DNA of 64,000 bases from IMGVR_UViG_3300028840_006257:124001-188000; one strand, 5' to 3'. Positions 26,986 to 58,197 are shown, counted from the stretch's first letter. The notes: generated by a model from the letters alone, not told the origin. Program-made: numbers and translations.

Positions 26986-27039
26986 ACGCGCGCGAGTAGA
27001 ATGGGGGATCGAACTCGTTCCCCCGCTTGCGCTGTGAAG

Positions 27040-33200: not shown

Positions 33201-34369
33201 AACGGTACGTTTACGACCTTGAGGTCGAAGGAAATCACAACTACTTCGCCAACGGCACCCTCGTTTCCAATTGCAGCGCGTACAAGAACCCGAGCACCCA
33301 GACCTACCAGGTGGTTCGGCATCTCGGCCATCCTGAGCGCGCGGCCCGACACTGGGGGCTCACGGCCACGCTGATCAAGAACAACCTCATCGAGGGCTTC
33401 GGCATCTACTCGCTGCTCGTTCCCGGCCTGTTCCCGTCGTCCAAGAACAGGTTCATGAACGAGTACTGCCTGACGCGTCTTCAGCCCATCCCGAACAGCA
33501 GGCGTCAGATCCCGGTCATCGTCGGCTACCGGCCCGACCAGATCGCCCGGTTCCGCGAGAAGATCGATCCGTACTTCCTCTCGAGGGCGAAGTTCGACGT
33601 GGCCAAGGAGCTGCCCGTGCTGACCATGCGGGAGCACAAGGTCGGCATGACGCGCGAGCAGGAGGACAAGTATCGCGAGGCCCTCTCCGGGTTGCTGGAG
33701 ATCGACAAGACGGGGGAGGAGAAGGAGATGACGAAGCTGACGGCGCTCACGTACTGTCAGGAGATCGTCGACCATCCCGAGCTCGTGGACTGCGAGGGCG
33801 ACAGCGAGAAGATGGACGCGCTGTTCACCATGCTGACCGAGGGAGACTTCGCGGACGAGAAGGTGATCGTGTTCAGCCGGTTCAGGAAGATGGTGGACAA
33901 GCTGGAGGCCGTCGCCAAGTCCAAGAGGTACGGGTTGAGCACCGTCCGCGTGACGGGCAAGGAGGAGGAGGACGAGCGCCAGGAGGCCATGCGGCGGTTC
34001 CAGGACCCGAACGACGCCGCCCGGATCTGCTGGATCACGACCGCCGCGAAGGAGGGCGTCAACCTCCAGGCGGCGAAGGTCCTCATCTTCTACGACTCCC
34101 CCTGGTCGGCGGGCGATTTCCTGCAGGTTCTCGGCAGGATGATTCGAATCGGCTCGCTGCACGACAGGTGCTACGCGGTACACCTGGTCGCGCGGGGGAC
34201 GATCGACGTGCACGTGATGGCCGTCCTGCGCAAGAAGATGAAGCTGATAGAGCAGGTCATGGGGAGGCGCCTCAAGGGCGATGACATGAGCGACGTCGTG
34301 GTAGCCTCCCAGGACAGCATCGACGACCTGTTCGCGGCGATGAGCCGGGACGCGAGGAGGGCGGTGTGA
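30221..34369 (+). CDS. SNF2-family helicase/ATPase precursor with two inteins (~536 aa after splicing)
   Basis: LGDDTGLGK|T (Walker A), LITDE|CS (Walker B), WGLTATLIKN, KVIVFSRF, TTAAKEGVNLQAA and WSAGDFLQVLGRMIRIG. Confidence 0.92.
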   Translation: MDARLKSAHAKLRELRERTDLSLRPTPLLKQTFTDFDGEEKPLRIRYYQVQGILHLVAMNRFLLGDDTGLGKCVVGDTLVKTDRGLVPIRDLNPGVEEPDSFAALEGVRFQVGVSEVQGRYFYYGGEKPTVRLRTRSGYELEGSQIHPVMVRRDGTDQWVRLRDLREGDFVAVERTDDFSVCEGRPEPALPGPGSGAPHERRHRIPSKMSPDLARFLGYLIGEGWFRRHDFFTLSQHREVNPEVYGDMEELGRVLFDVKMQPAEDGFTIASTQIVRFLRGIGCDPSLAPDKEVPWSVLQASPASMREFLRGFVDSEGSASELGIEVSSSSEKLLRQVQVMLLSFGVVSQRNPKLIEGRDRVYWRLQIQGDDARIFSRRIGLVSSRKTAALRPLLEQDSNPNYDVVPDASAEIEDLRAEVYARAGRHGYKGVGMTERWGSAFYNTLGHVRAGRRNPTYQYLRRFLEIAREVGISELNPAYARVQALVRRKWFYDPVDALEDGWAEVYDVEVDDPRHAFIGNGLVNHNTLMGIASLCYIWAKAPETKAVILTNKSLVQQWAGEFDKFCAPGEINVIVCTGVPAKRRKIYQEFEASTGPTVLVMGYATARRDIRQIQEWSGHVLITDECFQYHTPILLADGTQELIGRLVTRKTPAEVLSWNAETGEIEPRRIVGWYRKPMPGIHGRSPSKRTAAMLKLEFRWGGNLLSTPDHEFYRMDGTKVRARDLGSGDRIVHFDRNIPSPDQMQVLLGGLLGDSSVSHPRKTWAVAFGHGTAQKAYLEFKRDVLMSLGVSEVTETRSGYARSKKIWRFRMKANEEFTRVAQDDCGLLVPYSGPRTDRRYRKRITHEWLNRIGPLGLAIWYADDGSLTQYRRKDGSKGYQVRISTDDFTQSEAGMLAGWLYWVWGIKAEPKIEYRKSGGKRKRRRLPYPHLFLGDEAARSFFELLPGAFPGVQAKFPDGMRVLRPQDLDLLSQTQLRDDRLVRRSRWKTTKPAERYVYDLEVEGNHNYFANGTLVSNCSAYKNPSTQTYQVVRHLGHPERAARHWGLTATLIKNNLIEGFGIYSLLVPGLFPSSKNRFMNEYCLTRLQPIPNSRRQIPVIVGYRPDQIARFREKIDPYFLSRAKFDVAKELPVLTMREHKVGMTREQEDKYREALSGLLEIDKTGEEKEMTKLTALTYCQEIVDHPELVDCEGDSEKMDALFTMLTEGDFADEKVIVFSRFRKMVDKLEAVAKSKRYGLSTVRVTGKEEEDERQEAMRRFQDPNDAARICWITTAAKEGVNLQAAKVLIFYDSPWSAGDFLQVLGRMIRIGSLHDRCYAVHLVARGTIDVHVMAVLRKKMKLIEQVMGRRLKGDDMSDVVVASQDSIDDLFAAMSRDARRAV
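30437..31798 (+). mobile_element. Intein 1 (454 aa, LAGLIDADG endonuclease) in SNF2 Walker A
   Basis: Starts CVVGDT, ends GLVNHN, +1 Thr; LGYLIGEG and LRGFVDSEG motifs; lower GC. Confidence 0.92.
32096..33271 (+). mobile_element. Intein 2 (392 aa, LAGLIDADG_2-type) in SNF2 Walker B
   Basis: Starts CFQYHT, ends GTLVSN, +1 Cys; LLGGLLGDSS and LAIWYADDGS motifs. Confidence 0.9.
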
Positions 34370-35658
34370 CGGTCGAACCCGCGGTGATCAGGCGTCCTCT
34401 GGGTGACCGGGCCCGGACGGCGATCCTCTACTACGGTGCGAGCTGTCTCGAGACCCTGCGCTGTCTGGCGGACGAGTCGGTCCACTGCTGCGTGACTTCT
34501 CCTCCTTACTGGGGGCTCCGGGACTACGGGACCGAGGAAGATCAGATTGGGCTCGAGGAGAGGCCGGAGAAGTACGTCGATAACCTGCTGAACGTGTTTC
34601 GTGAAGTCCGGCGCGTCCTCCGAGACGATGGAACCGTGTGGCTCAACCTCGGCGATTCGTACGCACGGGGGCGTACAGGACGGGATGATGCGGGACGCAC
34701 GGTGGCAAAGAAGGACGCCTGGAAGGACACGATGCCACACGAGCGCCGTGATCGTGGCATCCCTCAAGGCCTGAAGAACAAGGACCTCGTGGGCATCCCG
34801 TGGATGGTGGCGTTCGCCCTGAGGGCCGACGGGTGGTACCTCAGGTCGGACATCGTCTGGGCCAAGTCGATCAGCGGAGACACGCGGACGGGTACCTGCA
34901 TGCCCGAGTCGGTAACCGACAGGCCCACGCAGTCCAAGGAGTACGTCTTCCTCCTGTCGAAGTCCCCGACCTACTTCTTCGACATGGATGCGGTACGGGA
35001 ACCCCACACGATGCGCCCACAGGCGCGTCCATCGGGCCACAAGCGCGGGAGACCGGGACCCCTCTTGCCGGAGCACACCTGGTCTGGGACTGCTCGCAAC
35101 GGGCCCGGCATCGACGGCGACCTCTCCGGTCGCAATCTCCGGTCCGTCTGGCACCTGAACCCCAAGCCTTATCCGGGGGCCCACTTCGCAGTCTTTCCTC
35201 CGACGTTGCCCCGTCTCTGCATCCTCGCAGGCACGTCCGAACGGGGTTGTTGTCCCATGTGTGGGACGCCCTGGGTTCGGGAGGTCGAGCGCTCTTCCAT
35301 GAAGGTGCGGGAAGGCCCTGGACGAGCCGGCCTCATGGGTGCCTCGACTACCGCCACCTCGCGGACGGCCTGCACCGGGACCGTCACGGAAGCACCCGTT
35401 TATCGCATGCTAGGATGGCGCCCGACCTGCGGGTGTCCCGAGCACGAGCCGGTCCCGTGCGTCGTGCTCGACCCATTCTCCGGCAGCGGGACGACGGGGA
35501 TGGTCGCCCTCGATCACGGACGCAACATCGTGGGACTGGACCTGAACGGAGACTATCTCGAGCTCGCTAGGGCTCGGATCCTCGGTGAACCCGTGCCAGA
35601 TCCGCACGAGGAGGACGACCTCGGGATCTTGAATTTCCTGGGAGTAGAAGATCCGTGA
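34366..35658 (+). CDS. Beta-class amino DNA methyltransferase (N4-C/N6-A)
   Basis: Motif IV VTSPPY at the N-terminus, RVLRDDG, HFAVFP, and motif I LDPFSGSGT at the C-terminus; Cys-rich insertion. Confidence 0.9.
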   Translation: MTVEPAVIRRPLGDRARTAILYYGASCLETLRCLADESVHCCVTSPPYWGLRDYGTEEDQIGLEERPEKYVDNLLNVFREVRRVLRDDGTVWLNLGDSYARGRTGRDDAGRTVAKKDAWKDTMPHERRDRGIPQGLKNKDLVGIPWMVAFALRADGWYLRSDIVWAKSISGDTRTGTCMPESVTDRPTQSKEYVFLLSKSPTYFFDMDAVREPHTMRPQARPSGHKRGRPGPLLPEHTWSGTARNGPGIDGDLSGRNLRSVWHLNPKPYPGAHFAVFPPTLPRLCILAGTSERGCCPMCGTPWVREVERSSMKVREGPGRAGLMGASTTATSRTACTGTVTEAPVYRMLGWRPTCGCPEHEPVPCVVLDPFSGSGTTGMVALDHGRNIVGLDLNGDYLELARARILGEPVPDPHEEDDLGILNFLGVEDP

Positions 35659-36545: not shown

Positions 36546-38110
36546 AGAACCTGCTGCGCTCGTGCTTCCTCGCCGACCCGACGGACAGCGCCGAGCTGCA
36601 CGCCCAGAACTACCACGCGATGGTGGACTCGGGCCTCGGCTTCGAGCTGCCCGAGGACAACATCATCTGGGCGTTCGTCCAGGACTTCTTCAAGAGCCAC
36701 GGGCACGTCCCCCTCGTCCAGTCGATCCGGTCGCACTACGAGGCCGTCCACGAGAACGACGTGGTCGACCGCCTCGAGCGACTCGCGATGATCAAGCCCA
36801 GGACTCGGGGCGACTTCCTCACCTACCTCGAGGAGAAGGCCAGGGACCGTCGCAACCGGGTCGTGCTCGAGCTCGCCAAGGAGATGACCCAGATCACCTC
36901 TACCGGGCTGGAGGTCAAGGGTCCGCGCGGGAAGTCCGAGAAGCTGTTCGGGGCGATCGACGCTATCCGTCACGTGCTCGACCGCAGCCACGACATCGTG
37001 GCCCCCACGCTCGGGACCAAGCTGTCGGGAAACCTGATGCAGGACGGCGACGACTTCATGGCGCGGTACGATCGCGTGAAGGCGGACCCGAAGTACGGCA
37101 TCGGGCAGTACTGCGGGATCGCCCAGATCGACGCCGCGATGAACGGCGCCAAGCGCTACGAGCTATGGGTCCACGCCGGGTTCACGGGCGCCCTGAAGTC
37201 CACGACGGGGCTCCACTGGGCCTACATCCAGGCGGTCTACTACGGCTTCTCGACGGTCTACTTCTCGCTCGAGATGCCGTACCTCCAGTGCCGCAACATG
37301 ATCTACACGATGCACAGCGCGCACGAGGACTTCAAGCCCGTGCGCGAGGAGCTGGGAATCGAGGGCATCGGGCTCGACTACGAGAGGGTCCGCGACGGAA
37401 ACCTCGCCCCGAACGAGGAGAGGTTCCTGCGCGAGTACGTCGTGCCCTCGCTGAACAAGCAGCGGGTCGTCCCGCCCCGGGGCAGGCACGCCCTGGATCC
37501 CCGAGACTACGGGGACATCCACATCGAGGTCGCCGATCCCGACAAGACCGACTTCACGGTCCCGGACCTGCGCGCCAAGGCCGAGCTGATCTTCTCCAAG
37601 ACGCCGTTCTCCATGATCGTCGTGGACCACGGCGGCCTCATGAGTGCGAGGCAGCGGTACTCGAACACGACCGAGAAGCTCAACGAGGTCGTGCGCGACC
37701 TCAAGCGGCTGGCGATGAGCTTCAACCGCGGCATGGGCATCGCCATCCTCCTCCTGTTCCAGATTAACCGCGAGGGCTACAAGCAGGCCGAGAAGAACGG
37801 CGGCCGCTACAACCTCGCGGCCCTCGCCTACGCGAACGAGTGCGAGAGGAGTGCCGACGTGGTGACGGCGACCTGGATCGACGACGCCCTCCGCAAGATG
37901 AACCGGGCCGTCTTCCAGTGCCTCAAGTCACGCGATCAGAAGCCGTTCGACCGGATCCCGGTGAAGGTCGAGTTCTCGTGCAGGCGCCTTCTGACGGACA
38001 AGACGACCTCGATCGAGGAGATCGACCAGAAGATGAGGGACGCGAGAGGTGATGCCCCGCGCATCGTCGAGTCGAGTCAGCAGGTTCCCGACCTGGGGTT
38101 GCAGACATGA
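36542..38110 (+). CDS. dnaB: DnaB-like replicative helicase
   Basis: AGFTGALKST (variant Walker A), YFSLEM, IVVDH, QINREG, ECERSADVV, LKSR. Confidence 0.85.
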   Translation: MKNLLRSCFLADPTDSAELHAQNYHAMVDSGLGFELPEDNIIWAFVQDFFKSHGHVPLVQSIRSHYEAVHENDVVDRLERLAMIKPRTRGDFLTYLEEKARDRRNRVVLELAKEMTQITSTGLEVKGPRGKSEKLFGAIDAIRHVLDRSHDIVAPTLGTKLSGNLMQDGDDFMARYDRVKADPKYGIGQYCGIAQIDAAMNGAKRYELWVHAGFTGALKSTTGLHWAYIQAVYYGFSTVYFSLEMPYLQCRNMIYTMHSAHEDFKPVREELGIEGIGLDYERVRDGNLAPNEERFLREYVVPSLNKQRVVPPRGRHALDPRDYGDIHIEVADPDKTDFTVPDLRAKAELIFSKTPFSMIVVDHGGLMSARQRYSNTTEKLNEVVRDLKRLAMSFNRGMGIAILLLFQINREGYKQAEKNGGRYNLAALAYANECERSADVVTATWIDDALRKMNRAVFQCLKSRDQKPFDRIPVKVEFSCRRLLTDKTTSIEEIDQKMRDARGDAPRIVESSQQVPDLGLQT

Positions 38111-38817
38111 GCCGCGTCGTTAAACTCTGGAAGGGAGACTGCCTGGAGCGGCTGCTCGAGATCCCAGACGGCACCGTTGGCGCCTTCATCTGCGATCCTC
38201 CCTACGACCTGACTCAGGCGAGTCGGCGAGGAAGCCCGCGACCGCCAGGATCGGGGCCCTTCGGGCGGCACACGCTGGCCACCCACGGACACGACCGCGG
38301 AGTCGGGTCCTCGGGGGGTTTCATGGGGAAGACGTGGGACGCGACGGGCATCGCGTTCGATCCCGAGTTCTGGCACCTCGCGTTCCGCAAGCTATGTCCC
38401 GGCGGCGTCGTCAAGGCATTCGGTGGGACCAGGACGCACCATCGGATGCTCCGCGTGGTCGAGCAGGCCGGCTTCGTGGACGCGTGCCTTGAGGCGTGGG
38501 TATACGGGTCTGGTTTTCCGAAATCGACGAACATCTCGAAGCAGATCGACCGGCGAGCAGGGGCACCGCGCGAGGTCGTCGGCTACAAGCGGGGAGTAGG
38601 GGGAGAGAACCTGAACGATCTGGTGCGGGGCTCGGAGATTCGACAGACGACGGACGCTGGCGGCCGGGGAATGGGCGCCTACGGCACGGGGGCGAGGCAG
38701 GTCCCCGTGGACGTGCCCGTGACCGTGCCCACGACCGAGCTGGCGAAGCTGTGGTCTGAGTATGGAACCGCGCTCAAGCCGGCTTGGGAACCAGTTGTGA
38801 TCGCCAGAAAACCATGA
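38107..38817 (+). CDS. DNA methyltransferase N-terminal (catalytic DPPY) half, no SAM-binding motif I
   Basis: FICDPPY, MGKTWD, PGGVVKAFGGTRTHHRM, WVYGSGFPKS; ends ALKPAWEPVVIARKP-stop. Confidence 0.8.
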   Translation: MSRVVKLWKGDCLERLLEIPDGTVGAFICDPPYDLTQASRRGSPRPPGSGPFGRHTLATHGHDRGVGSSGGFMGKTWDATGIAFDPEFWHLAFRKLCPGGVVKAFGGTRTHHRMLRVVEQAGFVDACLEAWVYGSGFPKSTNISKQIDRRAGAPREVVGYKRGVGGENLNDLVRGSEIRQTTDAGGRGMGAYGTGARQVPVDVPVTVPTTELAKLWSEYGTALKPAWEPVVIARKP

Positions 38818-39308
38818 GCAAAAGAACGAAAAGAAGGCACACATCACGTCCAACAACGCTGACGTGTGCCAATGCGTTGTGCGGGAAAGAATTCCAATCC
38901 TACGAAGGACCGGCGCATCTCAAGCGAAGCAAACGGCACTACTGTTGTCGGTCGTGTCAGAACACGACCCATGGTCTGGGGGGCACCGAGCGCCATAAGA
39001 TCTGGGAACGCCTCAGGAAACGGGCACGGCAGCAAAAAATCCCGTTTGAACTCACCGTGCACGACATCCCGGAAATCCCGGTACGATGTCCCGTTTTGGG
39101 CATCGAGATCAAGGCAAACTCCGAGGCTGGTCCTCTGGATACCAGTCCTTCGGTCGACAAAATCAACCCGTCCCAAGGGTATGTCCCCGGCAACATCCGC
39201 ATCATCAGCAACAGGGCTAACCGTATTCGCTCAGATGCCACGGCAGAGGAACTCTACAAAATCGCCCAAGATGCCGAGACATTGGAGGCCCGTAAAGCGG
39301 CGAGGTAA
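38814..39308 (+). mobile_element. Free-standing His-Me finger (HNH-like) homing endonuclease
   Basis: Start refined to ATG 38814 (ATGA overlap). CxxxxC...YCCRSC finger; CPVLG...SPSVDKINPSQGYVPGNIRIISNRAN; low GC. Confidence 0.8.
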
Positions 39309-39317
39309 GGTGAAGAC

Positions 39318-40109
39318 ATGCCGAACAGGCGACAGTTTCTGCAGATGCTCGGCCTCGGAGGAGCCTCCCTGGCCGTGTCCGCCGCCGTCGAGGCGAGCCC
39401 CATCGTCCCGCTGTTCTCGGGACGTGAAAGCAAGGTCTGGAGGCCCGAGCATGCCAGTTTGACGCGGAGTCACCTCGTCCTCACGCGTCCGAAGGAAACG
39501 TCGTGGACGCAATCTCCCACTCCCCGAGGCGCTCTTCTGGGCATCCAGCGGCTCGGCAAGAAGCGGTGGCCCATCGTGGGAGGAATGCGCCTTCCGATGA
39601 TCGATGACGCGGAAATCTGGTCCTCACCATGGAGGACGCGTCCTGAATCCGCCTTTTCCAACATCCGCGATGTCAAAGTCTTGCTGGAGAAGGGCGACGA
39701 TCCGCACGAGGCGTTCTACCGAGCCGCGATGAAGATGCGAGACGAGTTCGCCACGCAGTCGCGTCGGCGATTTGCCCAGGTTCCCGAGCCCCGACGACCC
39801 TACTCCCTGCTCGTCACCCTCGTGGACACTCCCATCTTCGCGGGTCCGTTGACCACTCCGGGGCCCTACGAGCCGGAAGACGCCGAGCGAGGTTTCTACC
39901 TCGAGATCAGCTACACTCCGCACCTCGTCGAGAACGGAGATCTCGAGCTCAACGGCTGGGGAATCTACTCCGAGAACGGCGAGTATCCGATAGAGGTTCC
40001 GACCGACGTGGACTTCGACCGCCTCCTGACCCTCGACCGCCTCGTTCTCGCGGGGGACGCCGATCCCCTCAGGTTCGCGGGCAAGCTGATCTCGGCCGCG
40101 CAGGATTGA
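39318..40109 (+). CDS. Hypothetical protein with twin-arginine (TAT)-like signal
   Basis: MPNRRQFLQMLGLGGASLAVSAAVEA. Confidence 0.6.
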   Translation: MPNRRQFLQMLGLGGASLAVSAAVEASPIVPLFSGRESKVWRPEHASLTRSHLVLTRPKETSWTQSPTPRGALLGIQRLGKKRWPIVGGMRLPMIDDAEIWSSPWRTRPESAFSNIRDVKVLLEKGDDPHEAFYRAAMKMRDEFATQSRRRFAQVPEPRRPYSLLVTLVDTPIFAGPLTTPGPYEPEDAERGFYLEISYTPHLVENGDLELNGWGIYSENGEYPIEVPTDVDFDRLLTLDRLVLAGDADPLRFAGKLISAAQD

Positions 40110-40112
40110 TCC

Positions 40113-42671
40113 ATGCGCATCGTGACGATGACGCGCAAGCCGTGCTCAGGTGGCAGCGCGACGAACAACGTCATCGGGCACCAGGCGGGAGCGCTGAACA
40201 TCGACGGCTGCCGCGTCGGGTACCTGTCCACGCGAGATTTTCGGGAGACGGTTAGCCGCAATCCGGGCACAGATCGCCGATTCGTCTCGAACCTGTACGA
40301 CACACAGAGCAAGACGAGGCCGATGCAGAGAGTGGACACGTCGGGAAGGTGGCCCGCGAACGTCGTGCTCGTCCACCGCCCAGAGTGTCATCATGTCGGC
40401 GCCGTCGCCGGACCTGGCTACACGATCAACCGCTGGACCGACGGGGCCAAGCCCTTCGGGGGCGGTGCGGGCCACGAGTACGAGAGCAAAGAACGGTCCG
40501 AGGAGCGCATCCCCGTCTGGGATTGCGTGGATTCCTGCGCTGTGGGGAAAATGGACGAACAGAGCGGGGTTTCTCGAAGCGGTGCCATGAGGCGGTACGT
40601 CGGCGCCTACGAGGGCGACTCCGTAACGGGATTTCTCCGTGGAAATTCAGGGCCGCACAACCAGAGGGATGATGTGGGAACCGCGGCCCGCTTTTTCAAG
40701 CAGGTGCAGAGCGAGGAGGACGCCATGAGCAACGTCCCACGGGAACTCTGGGACTACCTCTACACGATGATCGCGCCGCCACTCAGCTGCGAACCCATCA
40801 TCATCATGGACGCCGACCTGGCGGCCCTCGACCTCTCGCAGTTCGAGGACTCCTCCGTCCACGGCATGATCACGGTCGGGAACCCGGAGCTCTACATGAA
40901 GGAGATCGACCGGGTGCTCAAGCCAGGGGCACACCTTCTCCTGATCGCCCCCGACACTGAGCCGACGGGACACACGGGAGCCTGTGCCGTGGAGGACTTC
41001 GGCTACGAGATACGCGATGCCATCGCCCTCCTGGATGCTCCCGCCGAGTTCCACTACGTCGCGAAGGCGAGCACGAGCGAGCGCAACGCGGGCGTCCCCG
41101 AGTTCAGGCGCACGGTCGAGGTCGCGCGGCTGTTCCCGGCGGACGGCGTGGACGTCGAGGACCTCGCGGAGGACATGGCCGAACACCTCGAGGAGGAGCA
41201 GGCGCGCACGTGGCTTGAGGAGGGGCTGCCTCCGCACGCGGTGCCCGAAGATTTGAAGGACAAGTTCGTGGAGCGCAAGGTCAGCGTCGAGAAGGTGCGC
41301 CGCAACGATCACCCTTGTTTGCATCCTGATGACTTAGTGATGACCGCGAGGGGGTACCGGCCGTTGACGGAGGTTCAAACGGGGGATCTCGTATACTCGC
41401 AGGACGGTAGGTTCCACGTTATCGAGGAGGTCACCCGTCATCCGTATGCAGGCCCCTGTCTTTACGAGATCAGGGTGATCGGAACTAACTACACGACGAG
41501 AGCGAGCAACAACCACCCTTTCCTGGTCTGGCGGCCCGTGCGCGAGAGACGGTACATCCTGGGGGGGCACGTTCTGTGGCTTGATGCGGCAGATGTCCAA
41601 CGAGGGGATTACACGATGACTCCGATCATGGAGGACGAGCCTCTTGGAGACGGGCGCTCGGAGGAGTTGGCGGCACGAGCCGACGACGAAGAGTTCTGGT
41701 TCATGTTTGGTCTCTACCTGGCCGAAGGTTCAATCCATACTGCCGGGCCCGGGAAAGCCGCCTATCCGTCCTATGGATTGGGCGACCATGAGGACGATTT
41801 GCATCTGCGGATTGACGAGTACTTCGCACATGTCAAAGTCGGAATCTATGAGAAGGAATCGGGTACCGCCGTCGCAATCATTCCTTTTGATGCTGAGGCA
41901 GGACGAATTTTCCTCTGGCTCGGGGGAAAGGGAGCCGCGACTAAGAGTCTTCGTCCTGAGTTCTGGAGTCTCTCTCGGAGCGCACGAGAGGCAGTTTACG
42001 AGGGTTACATGGCCGGAGACGGAGGAGACGTCAGGAATCACAGGCAGTGCAAAACAGTATCGCAGGACCTCGCCTCTCAGATGTGGCTTCTTTCCGAGGG
42101 ACTGGGCTACAAGGCCAATCTGTTCCGGTACCCCGGAACGCCAGGTGGGATTGGAGATCGCGTCTTCAAGAGTGTAAGCCCTGAGCATCAGATGCACTTT
42201 TATAGTCGGAATCAGGCGCTCCAAAGGCGACAGCCTTCCAGGCCCACGCATCTTGAGCATGAAGGTCGACGGTATCTTCTGCGCTACGTCAAGGAAGTCC
42301 GAGAAGTCCCCTACGAGGGAGACGTGATGAACCTCAGCGTGGAGGGGTCTCCGACTTTCATGACACCTGTCGGGATGACCCACAACACCTGCAAACCCGT
42401 CGGCGTGATGGAACGGCTCCTCGCCGACGTCCCCAAGGACGCCCTCGTGGTCGATCCGTTCGTGGGTTCGGGCACGACCGGCATCGCGTGTCTCAGGACG
42501 GGACATGACTTCGTCGGCATCGAGCAGGACGCCGAGTACCTGAAGATCGCGGACCAGCGAATCCGGTACTGGGATCGAGCGGAGGCCGCGTGGCAGAACG
42601 CTGAGATCGAGAGCGAGGCCGAGCTCGAGGAGGACGAGCCGATGACTCTTGAGGACCTGTTCGGAGGCTAG
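40113..42671 (+). CDS. DNA methyltransferase C-terminal part (variable region, decayed catalytic region, motifs X-I-II-III) with intein
   Basis: Begins MRIVTMTRKP...GALNIDGCRV...GRWPAN...AARFF; RVLKPGAHLL...EDFGYEIRD present but DPPY absent; HP|TCKP; VDPFVGSGTTG; GIEQDAEY. Confidence 0.8.
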   Translation: MRIVTMTRKPCSGGSATNNVIGHQAGALNIDGCRVGYLSTRDFRETVSRNPGTDRRFVSNLYDTQSKTRPMQRVDTSGRWPANVVLVHRPECHHVGAVAGPGYTINRWTDGAKPFGGGAGHEYESKERSEERIPVWDCVDSCAVGKMDEQSGVSRSGAMRRYVGAYEGDSVTGFLRGNSGPHNQRDDVGTAARFFKQVQSEEDAMSNVPRELWDYLYTMIAPPLSCEPIIIMDADLAALDLSQFEDSSVHGMITVGNPELYMKEIDRVLKPGAHLLLIAPDTEPTGHTGACAVEDFGYEIRDAIALLDAPAEFHYVAKASTSERNAGVPEFRRTVEVARLFPADGVDVEDLAEDMAEHLEEEQARTWLEEGLPPHAVPEDLKDKFVERKVSVEKVRRNDHPCLHPDDLVMTARGYRPLTEVQTGDLVYSQDGRFHVIEEVTRHPYAGPCLYEIRVIGTNYTTRASNNHPFLVWRPVRERRYILGGHVLWLDAADVQRGDYTMTPIMEDEPLGDGRSEELAARADDEEFWFMFGLYLAEGSIHTAGPGKAAYPSYGLGDHEDDLHLRIDEYFAHVKVGIYEKESGTAVAIIPFDAEAGRIFLWLGGKGAATKSLRPEFWSLSRSAREAVYEGYMAGDGGDVRNHRQCKTVSQDLASQMWLLSEGLGYKANLFRYPGTPGGIGDRVFKSVSPEHQMHFYSRNQALQRRQPSRPTHLEHEGRRYLLRYVKEVREVPYEGDVMNLSVEGSPTFMTPVGMTHNTCKPVGVMERLLADVPKDALVVDPFVGSGTTGIACLRTGHDFVGIEQDAEYLKIADQRIRYWDRAEAAWQNAEIESEAELEEDEPMTLEDLFGG
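41316..42386 (+). mobile_element. Intein (357 aa, LAGLIDADG) in methyltransferase motif X
   Basis: Starts CLHPDD, ends GMTHN, +1 Thr; FGLYLAEGS and YEGYMAGDG motifs. Confidence 0.9.
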
Positions 42672-42674
42672 GCC

Positions 42675-43322
42675 ATGCGCGTCGTGACGGTGGCCCGAAA
42701 GCCGTGTTCGGAGAGCAGCACGGTGCGGAACGTGGTCAGGCACCAGGCGGGTGCGATCAACGTCGACGGCACGCGAGTCGCCGGACCTGCGTGGGTTCGG
42801 AGCACGGAGACGCTCGAGGACATCCGAGGAGGCCGGTATGGGGCCGCATCGAAGGACCGGATCGTGACGGAACCTCGAGAGATGCCCGAGGGAGGGCGCT
42901 GGCCCTGCAACGTCGTTTTCGTGCACCGTCCCACGTGCCAGGCCGTCGGGACGCGGAAGGTCTCGACCGGGACCGCCGTCCGACGCAACGTGGGGCACTC
43001 GACCAGGGGCCTGATCAGCTACGCGCGAGGAACCAAGGACGCCGAGATGAAGGACGACGTGACCTACGGCGAGAGAGACGGGAAGGAGACGGTGCTCGAC
43101 TGGCGCTGCGAGTCCGGCTGTCCCGTGGCCGAACTGGACCGACAGAGCGGGTTTCTCGCCTCAGGAGCGGGGGCCGTCAAGCGGGCGAGCTCGCAGGACC
43201 GAGAGGATAACAGGAGCGCGACCTACGGCGCCGAGAACCGTCGGGACGGCGAGCCCCAGGTCTGCTACGGAGATAGCGGGGGTGCCTCCCGGTTCTTCCG
43301 GCACTTCAAGGCCAGCTCCTGA
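42675..43322 (+). CDS. Stand-alone second copy of the methyltransferase variable (TRD-like) region
   Basis: MRVVTVARKP...GAINVDGTRV...GRWPCNVVFVH...CPVAELDRQSG...GASRFF parallels the N-terminus of the 40113 ORF; no catalytic or SAM motif. Confidence 0.7.
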   Translation: MRVVTVARKPCSESSTVRNVVRHQAGAINVDGTRVAGPAWVRSTETLEDIRGGRYGAASKDRIVTEPREMPEGGRWPCNVVFVHRPTCQAVGTRKVSTGTAVRRNVGHSTRGLISYARGTKDAEMKDDVTYGERDGKETVLDWRCESGCPVAELDRQSGFLASGAGAVKRASSQDREDNRSATYGAENRRDGEPQVCYGDSGGASRFFRHFKASS

Positions 43323-43430
43323 TCCCCCGTCGCCCCCTCTTGAGCCTCTGGCATGGTCGGGGACCCCTCCGGCTGGTCCGCACACAGTCGGGCCCTTGAA
43401 GGGCGTAAAAGCAGGGAGGAGGTCGATGGC

Positions 43431-44354
43431 ATGAGCTACACGGAGATGTACGCGGTCCGCGAGGACGGGGAGGTCGTGTCCTTCGCCGAGTTCGCGAACT
43501 CGCACGGCGGCGGCATGGCCGTCTGGCGCATCCTCATCAAGAAGTACTTCGGCGTCACCGGGGTTGGGCTCATAAAGATGATGGACGGCGGCTTCAAGGG
43601 ACTGTTCGAGTTCCAGAAGGAAGGCAAACTTCAACCCTGGGAGGACGTGGTGCTGACCACGACCTGCGATAACGTGATCGTCCCCATCGAGTGTGTCGAG
43701 ACCGTGGCTTCCGCGATGGAGGTTTTCGACGACACCTACGGGCCCGTCGAGAGGACCGAGCAGCGCGCCTTCTCCATCGGGCAGCAGGCCAAGGAGCTTC
43801 GTCGGATGCTGGCCGAGCGCGAGGAGCACGGCTGGCGAGGCGTCTGCTGGAACCAGACCTCCGTGAACGGAGACGCCCTCTGGTACGGCAGATGGGTCGA
43901 GTGTTCCGAGTGCGATTCCGTGGAGAGGGAACACGACGAGGAGGGGGAGAACGTTCCGTACAACGTCGACGAGCATGACGACCACTGGTTCTACAAGCCC
44001 GAGAGGATCGAGGGCGGATACGCGAGACCCAGGTCGAGCAAGGAGAGCGTCTACGACGAGCGGATTTCGCCGCTCATGACGGAGATTTTGAAGGTCTGCA
44101 AGGAGCACGGGATCAACATGGCCGCGACGTTCTCCCTCGACCCGTGCCAGGACGAGGAGAGCGAGAGCTACGGTGAGCCTCTCCTGTGCACTTCGGTCCT
44201 CGCGGTCGACGAGGCCGACGCCGCGGGTTTCGCGCTCGTGAACAACGTCCGACGCGTCGTACGCGACGGTTGGAAGGTCCAAGGGCCGCTCACGACGACC
44301 ATGACCATCCTTTCGCGCGACCCGCGCGGCTCCGGGGAGGACGGGGGCGAATGA
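43431..44354 (+). CDS. Hypothetical protein (~307 aa)
   Basis: Start refined to ATG 43431 (SD GGAGGAGG); may be a fusion of two small phage domains. Confidence 0.6.
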   Translation: MSYTEMYAVREDGEVVSFAEFANSHGGGMAVWRILIKKYFGVTGVGLIKMMDGGFKGLFEFQKEGKLQPWEDVVLTTTCDNVIVPIECVETVASAMEVFDDTYGPVERTEQRAFSIGQQAKELRRMLAEREEHGWRGVCWNQTSVNGDALWYGRWVECSECDSVEREHDEEGENVPYNVDEHDDHWFYKPERIEGGYARPRSSKESVYDERISPLMTEILKVCKEHGINMAATFSLDPCQDEESESYGEPLLCTSVLAVDEADAAGFALVNNVRRVVRDGWKVQGPLTTTMTILSRDPRGSGEDGGE

Positions 44355-44378
44355 GGCGCGTCTGCGCGCCCCGGAGCG

Positions 44379-44407
44379 TGTAAAAACTTCACGATCATCG
44401 TGCAGAG
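44379..44407 (+). promoter_or_regulatory. 29-bp motif TGTAAAAAC-NN-CACG-N5-CGTG-CAGAG, copy 2
   Basis: Matches the copy at 26618; ends 5 nt before the ligase ATG. Confidence 0.6.
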
Positions 44408-44412
44408 AGCGT

Positions 44413-46371
44413 ATGGCTAGCCGAAACATCCCGGAGATCGTCGAGCAGCTCGAGCAGTGGCGCGAGGCGTACTACAACGCCGAGCCGCTCGTCGACGACG
44501 CCGAGTACGACGCGCTCCTAGACGAGCTGCACGAGCTCGACCCCAACAACCCGTTCTTCAAGCACGTCGGCGCGACGCCGAAGGCTTCGACCAAGTGGAA
44601 GAAGGTCCGGCACGGCGCGCCGATGGGCTCCTTGAACAAGGTCCAGACTCCAGCCGAATTCGATGCCTGGGAGCAGGACGCCATCGCGAAGATCCGGGCA
44701 GCCGAGCGCGCCGGAGACCTCGACGGCCCAACGCGCGACTTTGTGATCAGCGAGAAGCTCGACGGCATCTCGGTCTCCATGCACTACGAGCAAGGCAGGC
44801 TGGCCGAGGCGATCACGCGGGGCGACGGCGAGACCGGCGAGGACATCACGCGCAACGTCCTGCTGATGAAGGGCGTCGTGAAGAAGGCGCGCGACTTCAG
44901 CGGGTACGTCCGAGGCGAGATCATCCTCACCAAGTCCGCCCACAAGAAGCACGTCCCCGACTACAAGAATCCTCGCAACGCGGCCTCCGGCATCGCAAAG
45001 CGCGAGTCCGACCCGGAGCCCTGCAAGCACCTCACCGTGGTCTGCTACCAGGTCATCAGCGACAAGCACAACATCGAGCGCAAGAGCCACGAGTTCAGGC
45101 TGCTCGAGGCCCTCGGCTTCGAGACCCCGAACTGGGAACTCCTCAAGGCAGGTGATGCCAGGGAGGTCCAGCAGGTCTACGACGAGTACGTGGCGAAGAG
45201 GCGCGACGCGCTCGACTACGAGATCGACGGCCTCGTCATCGAGTTCGACGATCTCGCCGCGATGGAACATCTGGGCGAGCACGACGGGCGTCCGAAGGGC
45301 GCGCGGGCCTTCAAGTTTCCGCACGAGGAGCAGGCGACGAGGCTTCGAGAGATCGTCTGGCAGGTCGGCAACTCGGGTCGAGTGACCCCGGTCGCCTACT
45401 TCGATGGCGTGAGCCTCGCGGGCGCGACGGTGTCGCAGGCGAGCCTGCACAACGAGTCCAACGTCCGGCGCCTCGCCGCCAGCTGCCCCCAGGGCCTCCT
45501 CGGCAAGTCCGACAAGATCCTGGTCAGCCGCCGCAACGACGTGATCCCCTACGTGGAGAGGGTCATAGCTGCCTCCAAGAGGGAGCGCCTGGCCGTTCCG
45601 AATGAGTGTCCCTCCTGTGGCACGAGGCTGACCAAGAAGGGCGAGTACCTCGTCTGCGCGAACGAGAAGAAATGCCCCGCGCAGCGGAGCGGCGCCGTCA
45701 AGCGATGGGTCAAGAAACTCGACATCAAGGGATGGGGCGACACCCTCGTCGAGGCTCTGTGCGAGTCGGGGATGGTCCGCGGCGTGGCCGACCTGTACGG
45801 TCTCGACGCGGACGAGCTGGGCGACCTGACGCTCTCGGGCAAGAAGGTCGGCAAGAGCACGGCCACCAAGGTCCTCAAGAACCTGCGGGCCAAGATGAAC
45901 CTGTCCATCGTGGACTTCGTCGGTTCCTTGGGCATCGACCTTTGGGGTCGCAGCATGGTGAAGTTCATCGTCCAGGCCGGGTTCGACACCCTGGAGAAGA
46001 TGGAGGACGCCTCGGTGGCCCAGATCGCGGCCGTGCCTGGCGTCGGTGACACGAAGGCCACGGCCTTCGTGGACGGGTTCAAGCACCGCCGGAAGGTGAT
46101 TGACGAGCTCCTGGCCGCGGGCGTGAAGATCAAGAAGCCGGTGACGGGCGGCAAGCTGAGCGGCGTGTCGTTCTGCTTCACAGGAGTGCGCGACCGCGCC
46201 TTCGAGACGCAGATCGAGGAGGCGGGCGGCACCGTGAAGAGCGGCGTTGGTAAGGGCCTGACCTACCTAGTCGCGAAGTCGAAAAGCGGCTCTTCTGCCA
46301 AACTCAAGAAGGCTAAGGCTCAAGGAGTCCAGATCCTCACTTTGGAGGAAGCGAAAGGGTTTCTGAAATGA
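44413..46371 (+). CDS. ligA: NAD-dependent DNA ligase
   Basis: AYYNAEP...DAEYD, ISEKLDG (KxDG), VRGE, NPRNAASG, YEIDGLV, AFKF, WQVGNSGRVTP, Zn finger CPSCG...C...C, HhH repeats and a C-terminal BRCT domain. Confidence 0.95.
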   Translation: MASRNIPEIVEQLEQWREAYYNAEPLVDDAEYDALLDELHELDPNNPFFKHVGATPKASTKWKKVRHGAPMGSLNKVQTPAEFDAWEQDAIAKIRAAERAGDLDGPTRDFVISEKLDGISVSMHYEQGRLAEAITRGDGETGEDITRNVLLMKGVVKKARDFSGYVRGEIILTKSAHKKHVPDYKNPRNAASGIAKRESDPEPCKHLTVVCYQVISDKHNIERKSHEFRLLEALGFETPNWELLKAGDAREVQQVYDEYVAKRRDALDYEIDGLVIEFDDLAAMEHLGEHDGRPKGARAFKFPHEEQATRLREIVWQVGNSGRVTPVAYFDGVSLAGATVSQASLHNESNVRRLAASCPQGLLGKSDKILVSRRNDVIPYVERVIAASKRERLAVPNECPSCGTRLTKKGEYLVCANEKKCPAQRSGAVKRWVKKLDIKGWGDTLVEALCESGMVRGVADLYGLDADELGDLTLSGKKVGKSTATKVLKNLRAKMNLSIVDFVGSLGIDLWGRSMVKFIVQAGFDTLEKMEDASVAQIAAVPGVGDTKATAFVDGFKHRRKVIDELLAAGVKIKKPVTGGKLSGVSFCFTGVRDRAFETQIEEAGGTVKSGVGKGLTYLVAKSKSGSSAKLKKAKAQGVQILTLEEAKGFLK

Positions 46372-58007: not shown

Positions 58008-58197
58008 GCGTCTGCGCTGGCACAGACAGGCGACCGGGATGACCGGCGCCGAGGTCGCTGCGGCGCTCAAGGTCTCGCCCGCCACGCTGTCTCGTTGGGA
58101 GAACGATCTGTTGTCACCCCCCGTGGTTCAGCTCCGACTCTTGGCGCGCGTGCTGGTCATTCCCGACTACTGGAACCTGCTGAGGGGCCCGGACTGA
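57982..58197 (+). CDS. XRE-family helix-turn-helix transcriptional regulator
   Basis: LGERLRWHRQATGMTGAEVAAALKVSPATLSRWEND. Confidence 0.85.
   Translation: MDRVGSLGERLRWHRQATGMTGAEVAAALKVSPATLSRWENDLLSPPVVQLRLLARVLVIPDYWNLLRGPD

What the first reader, a model, noticed from the sequence alone, without database searches (positions are those of the whole stretch)
38107..43322. Three-gene split beta-class DNA methyltransferase with a spare target-recognition module
One well-known phage MTase type reads DPPY...GSGFPK...EPxxxARKP...GALNIDxCR...GRWPAN...ARFF..AKAS..ER...HPTVKP...DPFxGSG. Here it is partitioned into three genes. Gene A (38107) has DPPY up to ARKP-stop. Gene B (40113) restarts at xxTRKP and has the variable region, a decayed catalytic region without DPPY, and the SAM-binding motifs. 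Gene C (42675) restarts at TVARKP and has only a second variable region. Neither A nor B is complete alone. Beta-class MTases are known to act as domain-swapped dimers and two-subunit MTases exist (M.AquI), so A+B complementation with C as an alternative specificity subunit is plausible. An HNH gene sits at the A break point.
Basis: partly seen in the sequence, partly recalled or inferred. Interest (0 to 1): 0.7.

Follow-up and report, generated by a model that had tools for sequence, protein, structure and literature searches.

The report
Naturally split phage DNA methyltransferase
A huge uncultured phage encodes one DNA methyltransferase as separate, conserved pieces (a catalytic half, a cofactor-binding half fused to a dead catalytic half, and free-standing DNA-reading modules), which most likely assemble into one enzyme and belong to a widespread, undescribed modular family.

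Summary
Gene A (38107-38817) is the DPPY half of a beta-class methyltransferase and stops right after EPVVIARKP. Gene B (40113-42671) restarts at that strand and carries a target-recognition domain (T1), a DPPY-less pseudo-half (N'), and the SAM-binding half (S). Gene C (42675-43322) is a free recognition domain.

The split is not decay:
- The closest relatives of A all stop at the same residue.
- More than 100 protein clusters share B's architecture, and about 80 share C's exact ends.
- dN/dS is 0.1-0.5.
- 35 of 36 well-flanked N'-S loci have an A-type gene beside them.
- One phage fuses A and B in a single frame.

Complex prediction (relative's A+B+C+SAM) puts A's beta4/DPPY against B's beta1/FxGxG: ipSAE 0.83, best control 0.33. 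B folded alone does not pack N' on S canonically.

The HNH gene is a sporadic insert, not the cause of the split.

Best reading: a multi-subunit, probably N6-adenine, methyltransferase with a trans-assembled catalytic domain and exchangeable recognition subunits. Activity is untested. I found no published description.

The parts
38107..38817 (+). Gene A, 236 aa. It is the N-lobe (strands beta4-beta7) of a beta-class amino-methyltransferase with motif IV DPPY, and ends at EPVVIARKP-stop. It has no SAM-binding lobe.
   Evidence: ORF. 41% identity to residues 2-180 of Adahisdi gp59. phrog_67 and phrog_6025 DNA methyltransferase. Start ATG overlaps the DnaB stop as ATGA.
38194..38205 (+). Motif IV, D30-P31-P32-Y33 of A. 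This is the only DPPY in the A-B-C set.
   Evidence: Read from the translation. D, P and Y are invariant in alignment A2.
38212..38319 (+). In-frame insertion of about 36 aa between DPPY-DL and GFMGKTWD. It is present in some relatives only.
   Evidence: Alignment of A-type proteins. It is the same site where 8 other phages carry a short stop-containing gap.
38814..39308 (+). Free-standing HNH/endonuclease VII-like gene, 164 aa from the ATG at 38814. It is a sporadic insert in the A-X gap.
   Evidence: phrog_3322 E 6.5e-29, phrog_1035, phrog_3118. ATGA overlap with A's stop. Absent or replaced at this place in relatives.
39318..40109 (+). Gene X, 263 aa. It has a twin-arginine-like signal (NRRQFLQMLGLGG) and no known family. 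It is conserved between A and B in several relatives.
   Evidence: tblastn shows 45-50% identity in L004, L005 and L089 (37% L093, 32% L085), at the same place in most. No Pfam or PHROG hit. Atlas search gave only weak leads. dN/dS 0.21-0.35.
40113..42671 (+). Gene B precursor, 852 aa. Order: T1, N', linker, intein, S. The spliced product would be 495 aa.
   Evidence: PF01555 at residues 755-813.
40113..40706 (+). T1, B residues 1-198. A beta7-like strand (MRIVTMTRKP) plus a target-recognition domain (GALNIDGCR, GRWPAN, a His/Cys3 site, ARFFKQV).
   Evidence: Matches gp59 residues 174-245. Same boundaries as the free T family. In the AF2 model of the L004 homologue, strand 2-8 has pLDDT about 96.
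40707..41051 (+). N', B residues about 199-313. A pseudo N-lobe: strands beta4'-beta6' are kept, motif IV is replaced by SVHGMITVGNP, and it has no beta7 of its own.
   Evidence: 29% identity to gp59 residues 15-160. Family consensus SVHGxIxxGxP, with no DPPY in 120 of 120 relatives. dN/dS 0.2-0.29.
41052..41315 (+). Linker from N' to S. It holds HYVAKASTSER, an acidic helical insert of about 55 aa, and the first half of motif X (..NDHP).
   Evidence: Alignment with intein-free and intein-bearing homologues.
41316..42386 (+). Intein, 357 aa, with a LAGLIDADG homing endonuclease. It has Cys1, SxxH (block B), LAEG and AGDG motifs, and ends ..THN before Thr+1. It splits motif X as HP|T(C)KP.
   Evidence: It is a precise in-frame insertion relative to P0105, P0106 and P0126. 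The same intein sits at the same site in P0113, P0118, P0129, P0141, P0183 and P0214. Sub-threshold Hint_2, Intein_splicing, LAGLIDADG_3 and TIGR01445 hits.
42387..42671 (+). S-lobe C-extein. It holds the rest of motif X (TCKP), motif I DPFVGSG (42453-42473), and motifs II and III.
   Evidence: PF01555 61.6 bits. In the model of the homologue, this part alone superposes on CcrM, M.RsrI and M.BceJIV (rmsd 1.3-2.9 A). dN/dS 0.17-0.24.
42675..43322 (+). Gene C, 215 aa. A free-standing recognition-domain subunit (T2): MRVVTVARKP ... GRWP ... H84/C88/C145/C149 ... GGASRFF.
   Evidence: About 80 homologous stand-alone proteins share the same start and end. C orthologues group together on the T-module tree, with moderate support (89/72), beside the strongly supported T1 clade. 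GGAGG lies 3 nt before its ATG, inside the end of B.

Best explanation
A, spliced B and C are subunits of one naturally split beta-class DNA amino-methyltransferase. DPPY suggests N6-adenine.

Proposed steps:
1. B is made as a precursor. Its intein must splice to rejoin motif X (HP-TCKP).
2. A's half-sheet (beta4-beta7, DPPY) packs against B's SAM-binding half (beta1-beta3, FxGxG, motif X). This rebuilds a normal Rossmann catalytic domain across two chains.
3. B's N' lobe is completed by the beta7-like strand at B's own N-terminus. N' carries T1 and acts as a catalytically dead second protomer that contacts A through the homologous helix. This mimics the obligate dimer of beta-class enzymes, where one protomer reads DNA for the other's active site.
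4. C is a further recognition subunit that docks through the same N-terminal strand and changes or extends specificity.

Shown: the anatomy, conservation, co-occurrence, a natural fusion, and predicted contacts. Inferred: assembly, activity, base specificity, and where C docks.
For: - Anatomy: only A has DPPY and only B has motifs X and I.
- The same cut is conserved. Six of the 80 nearest IMG/VR relatives of A stop within 0-4 residues of ARKP, and they include the closest ones (the top two matches and the best-matching segments). 61 are fused.
- 120 of 120 best hits of B start at the MRVVTVARKP strand and lack DPPY.
- About 80 free T proteins share the same ends and have invariant R8, P10, GRWP, and H/C3.
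- Purifying selection: A 0.13-0.18, N' 0.2-0.29, S 0.17-0.24, T1 0.08-0.28, C 0.11-0.5, with dS saturated.
- The SAM motifs of S are nearly invariant, although N' has lost motif IV.
- Co-occurrence: 35 of 36 unique N'-S loci with at least 4 kb on both sides have an A-type gene. All 36 have a T.
- Rosetta stone: L109 has A-T-N'-S in one 577-aa frame, with both beta7 strands kept.
- Predicted complex (L004 A+B+C+SAM): ipSAE 0.83, 0.86 and 0.82. Best control 0.33. That mark was reached by 58 of 80 solved complexes and 2 of 110 mismatched pairs. Runs agree on at least 64% of contacts. Partner pLDDT at least 67.
- Lowest-error pairs in that complex: A 24-28 (SIDAFVCDPPY) with B 360-363 (VVDCFMG); A 5-9 with B 381-386; A 129-130 (WIYG) with B 310-311 (FHYVAK); A 110-114 with B 283-287, the homologous helix of N'.
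- B folded alone: both lobes have pLDDT above 90, but beta-class structures superpose on S only (about 72-90 residues) or on N' only. Foldseek's full-length alignments have rmsd 16-24 A. So N' does not fill S's open edge.
- Operon-like packing with ATGA overlaps and 3-nt spacers, and no terminator.
- Inteins sit in conserved motifs of both A (in relatives) and B, as is usual for functional hosts.
Against: - There is no experimental or expression data. Only DNA contigs from three metagenomes were available.
- The complex was predicted for a relative (69%, 55% and 51% identical), not for the window's own proteins.
- An A-on-S contact copies the intrachain contact of ordinary enzymes, so the score may partly be memory.
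- My own alignments and a ligand were used, which is outside the tool's calibration.
- T starts before beta7 and N'S lacks exactly beta7+TRD, so T+N'S could on paper be a complete permuted fold without A.
- C's docking rests on four residues only. C folded alone is poor, pLDDT 62.
- One B-type locus (L092) has no A within 8 kb.
Confidence: 0.6

Rival explanations
1. B is a self-contained, catalytically dead pseudo-methyltransferase. T1's strand completes N', and N' packs on S as a circularly permuted fold. B binds SAM and DNA as a regulator, a decoy, or the recognition partner of another complete methylase. A is an unrelated or merely dimerising half-protein. No composite A-S active site forms.
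For: T (beta7+TRD) and N'S (an enzyme minus beta7+TRD) are exact complements, whereas A and T overlap by beta7. Two complete PF01555 enzymes lie in the same record, at window 34366-35658 and 58095-59015. L092 has B without A within 8 kb.
Against: AF2 of B alone does not pack N' on S canonically. The complex prediction puts A's beta4, not N', on S's beta1. A-type genes accompany 35 of 36 N'-S loci and keep an invariant DPPY. L109 fuses A to B. A half Rossmann fold such as A is unlikely to be stable or selected on its own (dN/dS 0.13-0.18).
Confidence: 0.17
2. The three genes are decaying debris of one or more methylase genes, broken by the HNH endonuclease, the intein and recombination. They have no function.
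For: Mobile elements crowd the locus: the HNH gene, an intein in B, and inteins in the SNF2 and PolA genes nearby. N' has lost DPPY.
Against: The same breakpoints occur in phages only 45-70% identical, and in more than 100 protein clusters. All frames are intact. dN/dS is 0.1-0.5 with saturated dS. Relatives split identically have no HNH. T1 and C form separate orthologue clades.
Confidence: 0.03
3. A single full-length enzyme is restored after transcription or translation, by intron splicing, protein trans-splicing, or ribosomal frameshift or bypass between A and B.
For: A's end and B's start repeat the same strand. Elsewhere in the family a short stop-containing gap after DPPYG looks like a ribosome hop.
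Against: No Rfam intron is found in 37500-44500. 1.3 kb holding two conserved, separately translated genes (HNH and X) lies between A and B. There are no split-intein motifs at A's end or B's start. Every T and B gene has its own start codon, and B and C begin 3 nt after the upstream stop (C behind a GGAGG). No joints appear in three metagenomes.
Confidence: 0.03
4. C (and free T genes in general) are silent cassettes. [quoted passage not shown]
For: The 5' ends of B and C share 108 nt at 75% identity, and both end in the SRFF coding motif.
Against: There is no long identical stretch to recombine on. C has its own ATG behind a GGAGG. Free T proteins have conserved starts and stops, and many systems have N'S with no fused T at all, so T must act in trans there. 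No rearranged contigs appear in three metagenomes.
Confidence: 0.05

Closest known systems
Single-chain phage beta-class methylases of Pfam PF01555 (e.g. Mycobacterium phage Adahisdi gp59, 353 aa)
   Same: Same motifs in the same order: DPPY, GFMGKxWD, YGSGFPK, EPVVVARKP, GALNIDxCR, GRWPAN, SRFF-YxAKAS-ER, HPTVKP, DPFxGSG. About 40% identity over A.
   Different: There, all motifs lie in one polypeptide. Here they are spread over A, B and C, with an extra DPPY-less N-lobe and duplicated copies of the beta7 strand.
Beta-class dimers with division of labour: CcrM, M.EcoP15I Mod2, M.RsrI, M.BceJIV (review PMC7544214)
   Same: B's S-lobe superposes on their C-terminal halves (Z 6.4-7.2, rmsd 1.2-2.9 A). 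They are obligate dimers in which one protomer's TRD serves the other's catalytic site. The predicted A-N' contact uses homologous elements, like a dimer interface.
   Different: Those are homodimers of complete chains. Here the second protomer would be hard-wired as dead (N'), would lack its own S-lobe, and would be covalently tied to the S-lobe that serves the first.
Active/pseudo-enzyme heterodimers of the same superfamily: METTL3-METTL14, ciliate MTA1-MTA9 (PMC7544214)
   Same: One catalytic subunit plus one degenerate paralogue that has lost motif IV and supports substrate binding.
   Different: Each of those subunits is a complete fold. None builds its Rossmann domain from two chains, and none has free TRD subunits.
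Natural two-polypeptide C5 methyltransferases M.AquI and M.EcoHK31I (cited in PMC3404938, PMC2836561)
   Same: A DNA methyltransferase assembled from two gene products.
   Different: They belong to a different class (C5-cytosine, other motif order), have other break points, and have no pseudo-lobe and no separate recognition subunits.
Type I R-M HsdM/HsdS
   Same: Specificity is carried by a separate polypeptide that can be exchanged.
   Different: HsdS is unrelated in sequence and fold to these T modules. HsdM is a complete gamma-class enzyme.
Inteins in mycobacteriophage N6_N4_Mtase genes (DNMT-1/2; PMC5050341)
   Same: An intein inside a phage PF01555 methylase.
   Different: Here the host is the B-type subunit of a split enzyme, and the site is motif X. 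Sequence hits to intein families are sub-threshold.

Membership tests
Beta-class N6/N4 DNA methyltransferase (PF01555) | Motif IV (D/S)PP(Y/F) on the strand after the N-terminal helix | tested here: met
   A residues 30-33 are DPPY, invariant in alignment A2. There is none in B or C.
Beta-class N6/N4 DNA methyltransferase (PF01555) | Motif X and motif I (HPTxKP ... DPFxGSG) C-terminal to the TRD; Pfam score over the cut-off | tested here: met
   B residues 755-813 score 61.6 bits against PF01555 (cut-off 26.7), with DPFVGSG at 781. A alone gives no Pfam hit at E 0.01.
Beta-class N6/N4 DNA methyltransferase (PF01555) | Motifs IV and I in one polypeptide forming one Rossmann domain | tested here: not met
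   Motif IV is only in A and motif I is only in B, and two genes lie between them.
Beta-class N6/N4 DNA methyltransferase (PF01555) | SAM-dependent methylation of DNA | not testable with these tools
   No assay and no methylome data are available.
Modular split family defined here (A | T | N'-S) | An A-type gene that ends within a few residues of EPxxVxRKP | tested here: met
   The window's A ends at ARKP. The same is true in L004, L005, L011, L019, L025, L089, L090 and L091.
Modular split family defined here (A | T | N'-S) | An N'-S unit with SVHGxIxxGxP in place of DPPY and intact motifs X and I | tested here: met
   B has SVHGMITVGNP at 248-258. Family consensus; 120 of 120 relatives lack DPPY.
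Modular split family defined here (A | T | N'-S) | T module(s) that start at M-R/K-V-V-T-V-A-R-K-P and end at GGASRFF, free or fused to N' | tested here: met
   T1 of B and gene C.
Class 1 intein with LAGLIDADG endonuclease | In-frame insertion absent from homologues; Cys/Ser1; C-terminal His-Asn; Cys/Ser/Thr at +1 | tested here: met
   B residues 402-758: CLHPDD ... GMTHN followed by T. The insertion is absent in P0105, P0106 and P0126.
Class 1 intein with LAGLIDADG endonuclease | Curated family models over threshold | tested here: not met
   Hint_2 18 bits (cut-off 28.4), Intein_splicing 17.1 (35.8), LAGLIDADG_3 12.3 (22.5), TIGR01445 14.4 (24.5). No PDB sequence hit.
Class 1 intein with LAGLIDADG endonuclease | Protein splicing activity | not testable with these tools
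   Inferred only.
HNH / endonuclease VII-like homing endonuclease | Family profile match | tested here: met
   phrog_3322 E 6.5e-29, phrog_1035 E 1.1e-17, phrog_3118 E 2.3e-6. No Pfam or NCBIfam hit.
HNH / endonuclease VII-like homing endonuclease | Catalytic His-Asn-His residues and sporadic, mobile distribution | tested here: inconclusive
   The distribution is sporadic. The catalytic residues were not verified.
Two-subunit methyltransferases of the M.AquI / M.EcoHK31I kind | C5-cytosine motifs (PCQ, ENV) split between alpha and beta chains | tested here: not met
   The motifs here are of the amino-methyltransferase beta class. This is an analogy only.

The most novel reading that the evidence does not exclude
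The family is a hub-and-spoke, combinatorial methyltransferase. One N'-S protein lends its single SAM-binding lobe in turn to several different catalytic half-proteins (A) and recognition subunits (T). A phage can then write many methylation specificities with one cofactor module. Examples: L091 has 5 A and 5 free T around one B, and L129 has 7 A and 6 T around one N'S. The window's A+B+C would be the small version. This would be a Rossmann-fold enzyme whose catalytic domain is routinely assembled from exchangeable chains.
Probability: 0.3. Interest if true: 0.85.

Novelty: new variant of a known kind. Interest (0 to 1): 0.7.

Why it matters
If A and B do assemble, this is a natural enzyme whose Rossmann catalytic domain is built across two polypeptides. 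Its recognition domains are separate, exchangeable subunits, and its second dimer protomer has been reduced to a dead scaffold.

It would give a direct natural test of the 'division of labour' model for beta-class methyltransferases.

It would explain hundreds of metagenomic proteins now labelled only 'DNA modification methylase' or 'hypothetical'.

It suggests how huge phages diversify anti-restriction methylation cheaply.

The parts (an A half, an N'S half, plug-in T modules) are also an attractive template for split or programmable methyltransferases, which so far have been made artificially.

Tried and rejected
- Group I/II intron or other RNA between A and B: Rfam at E up to 1 on 37500-44500 found nothing relevant.
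- Close DNA relatives among cultured phages: none. Only a 136-nt hit.
- B-type proteins in cultured phages: none cover at least 80% of the query. One uncultured 485-kb phage record is the best hit.
- C-based pattern scan of IMG/VR found nothing.
- Population variants lacking the HNH gene or the intein: three metagenomes hold the stretch as one contig, with no joints. No RNA run was listed among the holders (the search was kind 'any', not RNA-specific), so there is no expression evidence.
- A near-identical contig (L088, 1 mismatch) was useless for dN/dS.
- DNA-level cassette switching: only a 108-nt, 75% repeat between the 5' ends of B and C.
- Promoter and terminator scan: nothing above chance.
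- Intein against PDB sequences: no hit.
- Fold of C alone: low confidence, so it was not searched.
- X: no family from Pfam, PHROGs or the Atlas.
- L092's whole record could not be searched for an A gene.
- Literature searches for a split beta-class phage methylase found no description.


Full report
**Context.** The window is bases 124001-188000 of a 213-kb IMG/VR virus record. CheckV estimates it as 40% complete, so this is a huge phage, with G+C about 65%. The finding lies in a replication and DNA-metabolism block, all on the + strand. The order is: an SNF2 helicase, a complete SPPY-type methylase (34366-35658), an unknown gene, a DnaB-like helicase, A, HNH, X, B, C, an unknown gene, then NAD-dependent ligase, primase and PolA.

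**Observation.** I compared them with a complete 353-aa mycobacteriophage methylase, Adahisdi gp59:
- A covers residues 2-180 (E 1e-47), that is DPPY to EPVVVARKP, and then stops.
- B 4-86 restarts at residue 174, the same strand, and covers the variable region.
- B 241-367 matches residues 15-160 again at 29% identity, without DPPY.
- B 755-817 matches the SAM-binding end (PF01555, 61.6 bits).
- C matches only the variable region, up to SRFF.

It is incomplete in one major respect. Alignment with intein-free homologues shows that B residues 402-758 (nt 41316-42386) are an in-frame insertion. It begins with Cys, contains SxxH and two LAGLIDADG motifs, and ends His-Asn before Thr. It splits motif X as HP|TCKP. 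The same element sits at the same site in six homologues whose exteins are only 39-61% identical. JGI labels two of them intein/homing endonuclease. Family models hit it only below threshold. Inteins in phage PF01555 methylases are already known (PMC5050341).

**Is the split conserved?** Yes, on several counts.
- Of the 80 best IMG/VR relatives of A, six stop within 0-4 residues of ARKP, and they include the closest relatives (the top two matches and the best-matching segments). 61 run on as ordinary fused enzymes.
- L004, L005, L019, L025, L089 and others repeat the order A-(X)-B-C at 45-70% protein identity. Most have no intein in B and no HNH.
- In L025, B starts 4 nt before A's stop, so the split does not depend on any insert.
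- The A-X gap holds the window's HNH, a different HNH in L005, an unrelated ORF in L004, and nothing in L089. The HNH gene is therefore a sporadic passenger.
- In the 5.8-billion-protein collection, all 120 best hits of an intein-free B (E below 1e-69) begin at the M-R-V-V-T-V-A-R-K-P strand and have no DPPY.
- About 80 clusters of 130-240-aa proteins match C from first to last residue. They share the start MRVVTVARKP and the end GGASRFFKQV. Invariant residues are R8, P10, R34, GRWP, N79, H84, C88, C145 and C149, the last four being a likely zinc site.
- No cultured phage has a B-type protein.
- dN/dS against four relatives is 0.13-0.18 for A, 0.2-0.29 for N', 0.17-0.24 for S, 0.08-0.28 for T1 and 0.11-0.5 for C. 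dS is saturated, so these are upper bounds.
- On a tree of T modules, the T1 modules of seven phages form one clade (100/99) and the C modules another. C is therefore an old, maintained paralogue, not a recent spare.

**A wider family.** I built profiles for the four modules: N (the A-type lobe), N', S and T. I scanned 78 IMG/VR loci found with the B alignment, plus loci fetched earlier.
- 47 unique loci carry an N'-S gene.
- Of the 36 with at least 4 kb on both sides, 35 have at least one A-type gene (an N-lobe without S). All 36 have at least one T.
- In 21 of these 36, T is fused in front of N'-S, as in the window. In 15, N'-S stands alone with free T genes.
- The commonest minimal form is A (about 190 aa), T (about 200 aa) and N'S (about 240 aa).
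- Copy numbers vary. L091 has five A genes (all with DPPY) and five free T genes around one B, often as A-T pairs with overlapping stop and start. L129 has seven A and six T.
- L109 has A, T, N' and S in one 577-aa open frame, with both beta7-like strands retained. This is a natural fusion, and it argues that A and B act in one complex.
- In L019 and L025, A itself carries an intein inside YG|SGFPK.

**Mechanism.** The logic from sequence is this. The S-lobe keeps nearly invariant SAM motifs (HPTVKP, DPFMGSG) although the N' next to it has lost motif IV. The only motif IV in the system is on A, and A has no SAM lobe. An active site requires beta4 (motif IV) to lie beside beta1 (motif I).

The complex prediction used L004's A, B and C plus SAM, with my alignments.
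- A scored ipSAE 0.83, 0.86 and 0.82 against the rest. The best control was 0.33.
- That mark was reached by 58 of 80 solved complexes and 2 of 110 mismatched pairs.
- The runs share at least 64% of contacts, and the partner pLDDT is at least 67.
- The lowest-error pairs are: A 24-28 (in SIDAFVCDPPY) with B 360-363 (in VVDCFMG); A 5-9 with B 381-386 (beta2); A 129-130 (WIYG) with B 310-311 (FHYVAK); and A 110-114 with B 283-287, which is the homologous helix of N'.
- So from FHYVAK onward, B wraps A as the C-terminal part of an ordinary enzyme wraps its own N-lobe. N' touches A through equivalent elements, like a dimer interface.

AF2 of B alone is confident: pLDDT 82.5, both lobes above 90, and the N-terminal strand about 96. 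Solved beta-class enzymes superpose on S alone (CcrM, M.RsrI, M.BceJIV; about 72-90 residues, rmsd 1.2-2.9 A) or on N' alone, never on both. Foldseek's 210-250-column alignments have rmsd 16-24 A. So even without A present, N' is not predicted to fill S's open edge.

This fits what is known of the class. Beta-class enzymes are obligate dimers in which the TRD of one protomer serves the catalytic domain of the other (PMC7544214). Here the second protomer would be reduced to N'+T1 and tethered to the S-lobe that completes the first.

Where C docks is weakly defined. Only residues 1, 3, 5 and 80 touch A confidently, and C alone folds poorly. In systems where N'S has no fused T, free T modules must supply the missing beta7 in trans. 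T modules are therefore protein subunits, and C is most simply an additional or alternative recognition subunit.

DPPY, rather than SPPY, suggests N6-adenine. This rests on general knowledge of the class and was not tested.

**Caveats.**
- Everything is computational.
- The complex is for a relative, not for the window's proteins.
- The A-on-S contact imitates an intrachain contact of ordinary enzymes, and may be partly recalled by the model.
- T and N'S are exact complements on paper.
- One B locus (L092) has no A within 8 kb, and its record could not be searched.
- The stretch is found in three metagenomes as plain contigs, without variants. No RNA data were available.

**Novelty.** Database pipelines call B-type proteins 'DNA modification methylase' and most T proteins 'hypothetical'. 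Full-text searches, a jumbo-phage genomics survey (PMC7824862) and a review of the beta class found no description of this organisation. The known natural two-chain methyltransferases, M.AquI and M.EcoHK31I, are C5 enzymes (PMC3404938, PMC2836561). I rate this a new variant of a known kind, with interest 0.7.

**Side finding.** In eight different IMG/VR phage contigs, an A-type gene is interrupted immediately after ...DPPYG. The interruption is a stop codon plus 2-9 further bases. Reading then resumes at a Gly codon followed by (L/I)EFMGK, which restores the canonical DPPYGLEFMGK. Four of the eight have identical Gly codons on both sides, for example GGC-TGA-TT-GGC. This looks like a short programmed ribosome hop of the T4 gene 60 kind (compare 10.1101/2022.08.31.505936), or else a further split. 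The window's own A has an in-frame insertion of about 36 aa at the same site.

Noticed in passing
L172:1655-1682, L173:3502-3535(-), L174:7121-7155, L175:286-319, L176:625-652(-), L177:13541-13568(-), L178:64-91, L179:3004-3035: In eight phage contigs an A-type methylase gene is broken right after ...DPPYG. The break is a stop codon plus 2-9 nt (5-12 nt in all). Reading then resumes at a Gly codon followed by (L/I)EFMGK. The take-off and landing Gly codons are identical in four cases. This is a candidate short ribosome hop (like T4 gene 60) or a further gene split.
   Followed up: partly
window 39318-40109 (+): Gene X has a twin-arginine-type signal peptide (NRRQFLQMLGLGG..A.A) and no known family. 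It is conserved between A and B in L004, L005, L085 and L089, and lies upstream of A in L093. dN/dS is 0.21-0.35. It is odd to find an apparently exported protein inside a methylase operon.
   Followed up: partly
L091:5591-13129; L129 (whole locus); L161 (whole locus): These are arrays of modules around a single N'-S gene. L091 has 5 A and 5 free T, mostly as A-T pairs with overlapping stop and start. L129 has 7 A and 6 T. L161 has 2 A and 7 T.
   Followed up: partly
L109:9425-11158: One 577-aa open frame holds A, T, N' and S together, a natural A-B fusion. Both beta7-like strands (EPIIVCRK and HLIYIGRKP) are kept.
   Followed up: partly
L019:6699-8318; L025:7965-9707: The A-type genes of these relatives carry an intein of about 300 aa inside the conserved YG|SGFPK motif (Cys1 ... 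GN|Ser+1).
   Followed up: partly
window 30221-34369 (+): An SNF2-family helicase gene of 1382 aa shows two Intein_splicing stretches and both LAGLIDADG_2 and LAGLIDADG_3 domains. It probably has two inteins in one gene.
   Followed up: no
window 48652-52920 (+): A family A DNA polymerase of 1422 aa has an intein with a LAGLIDADG_3 domain, around residues 762-1160. The window is unusually rich in inteins.
   Followed up: no
window 27001-28713 (+): A phage-encoded Cpn60/GroEL-type chaperonin (PF00118, E 2e-46).
   Followed up: no
window 34366-35658 (+) and 58095-59015 (+): Two further complete PF01555 methyltransferases lie in the same window. The first has SPPY (a possible N4-cytosine type) and a Cys-rich insert. 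Homologues of the first also lie upstream of the split system in relatives.
   Followed up: no
L002:2474-4357 (Mycobacterium phage Pollywog gp67): This cultured-phage methylase is fused. It has a low-complexity insert of about 200 aa exactly at the A/T junction, flanked by two copies of the beta7 strand (EPVCVAVKP ... EPIVVARKP). The junction seems to be a permissive hot spot.
   Followed up: no
window 38212-38319 (+): An in-frame insertion of about 36 aa in A lies directly after DPPY-DL. It is shared with L004, L011 and L025 and absent in L005, L019 and L089. It is at the same site as the stop-containing gaps seen in other phages.
   Followed up: partly
L004:10127-10348; L019:8282-8536; L089:6783-7004: A conserved small ORF of 73-84 aa (MMEGDNRVYY...) sits just upstream of B in several relatives. 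It is absent from the window.
   Followed up: no
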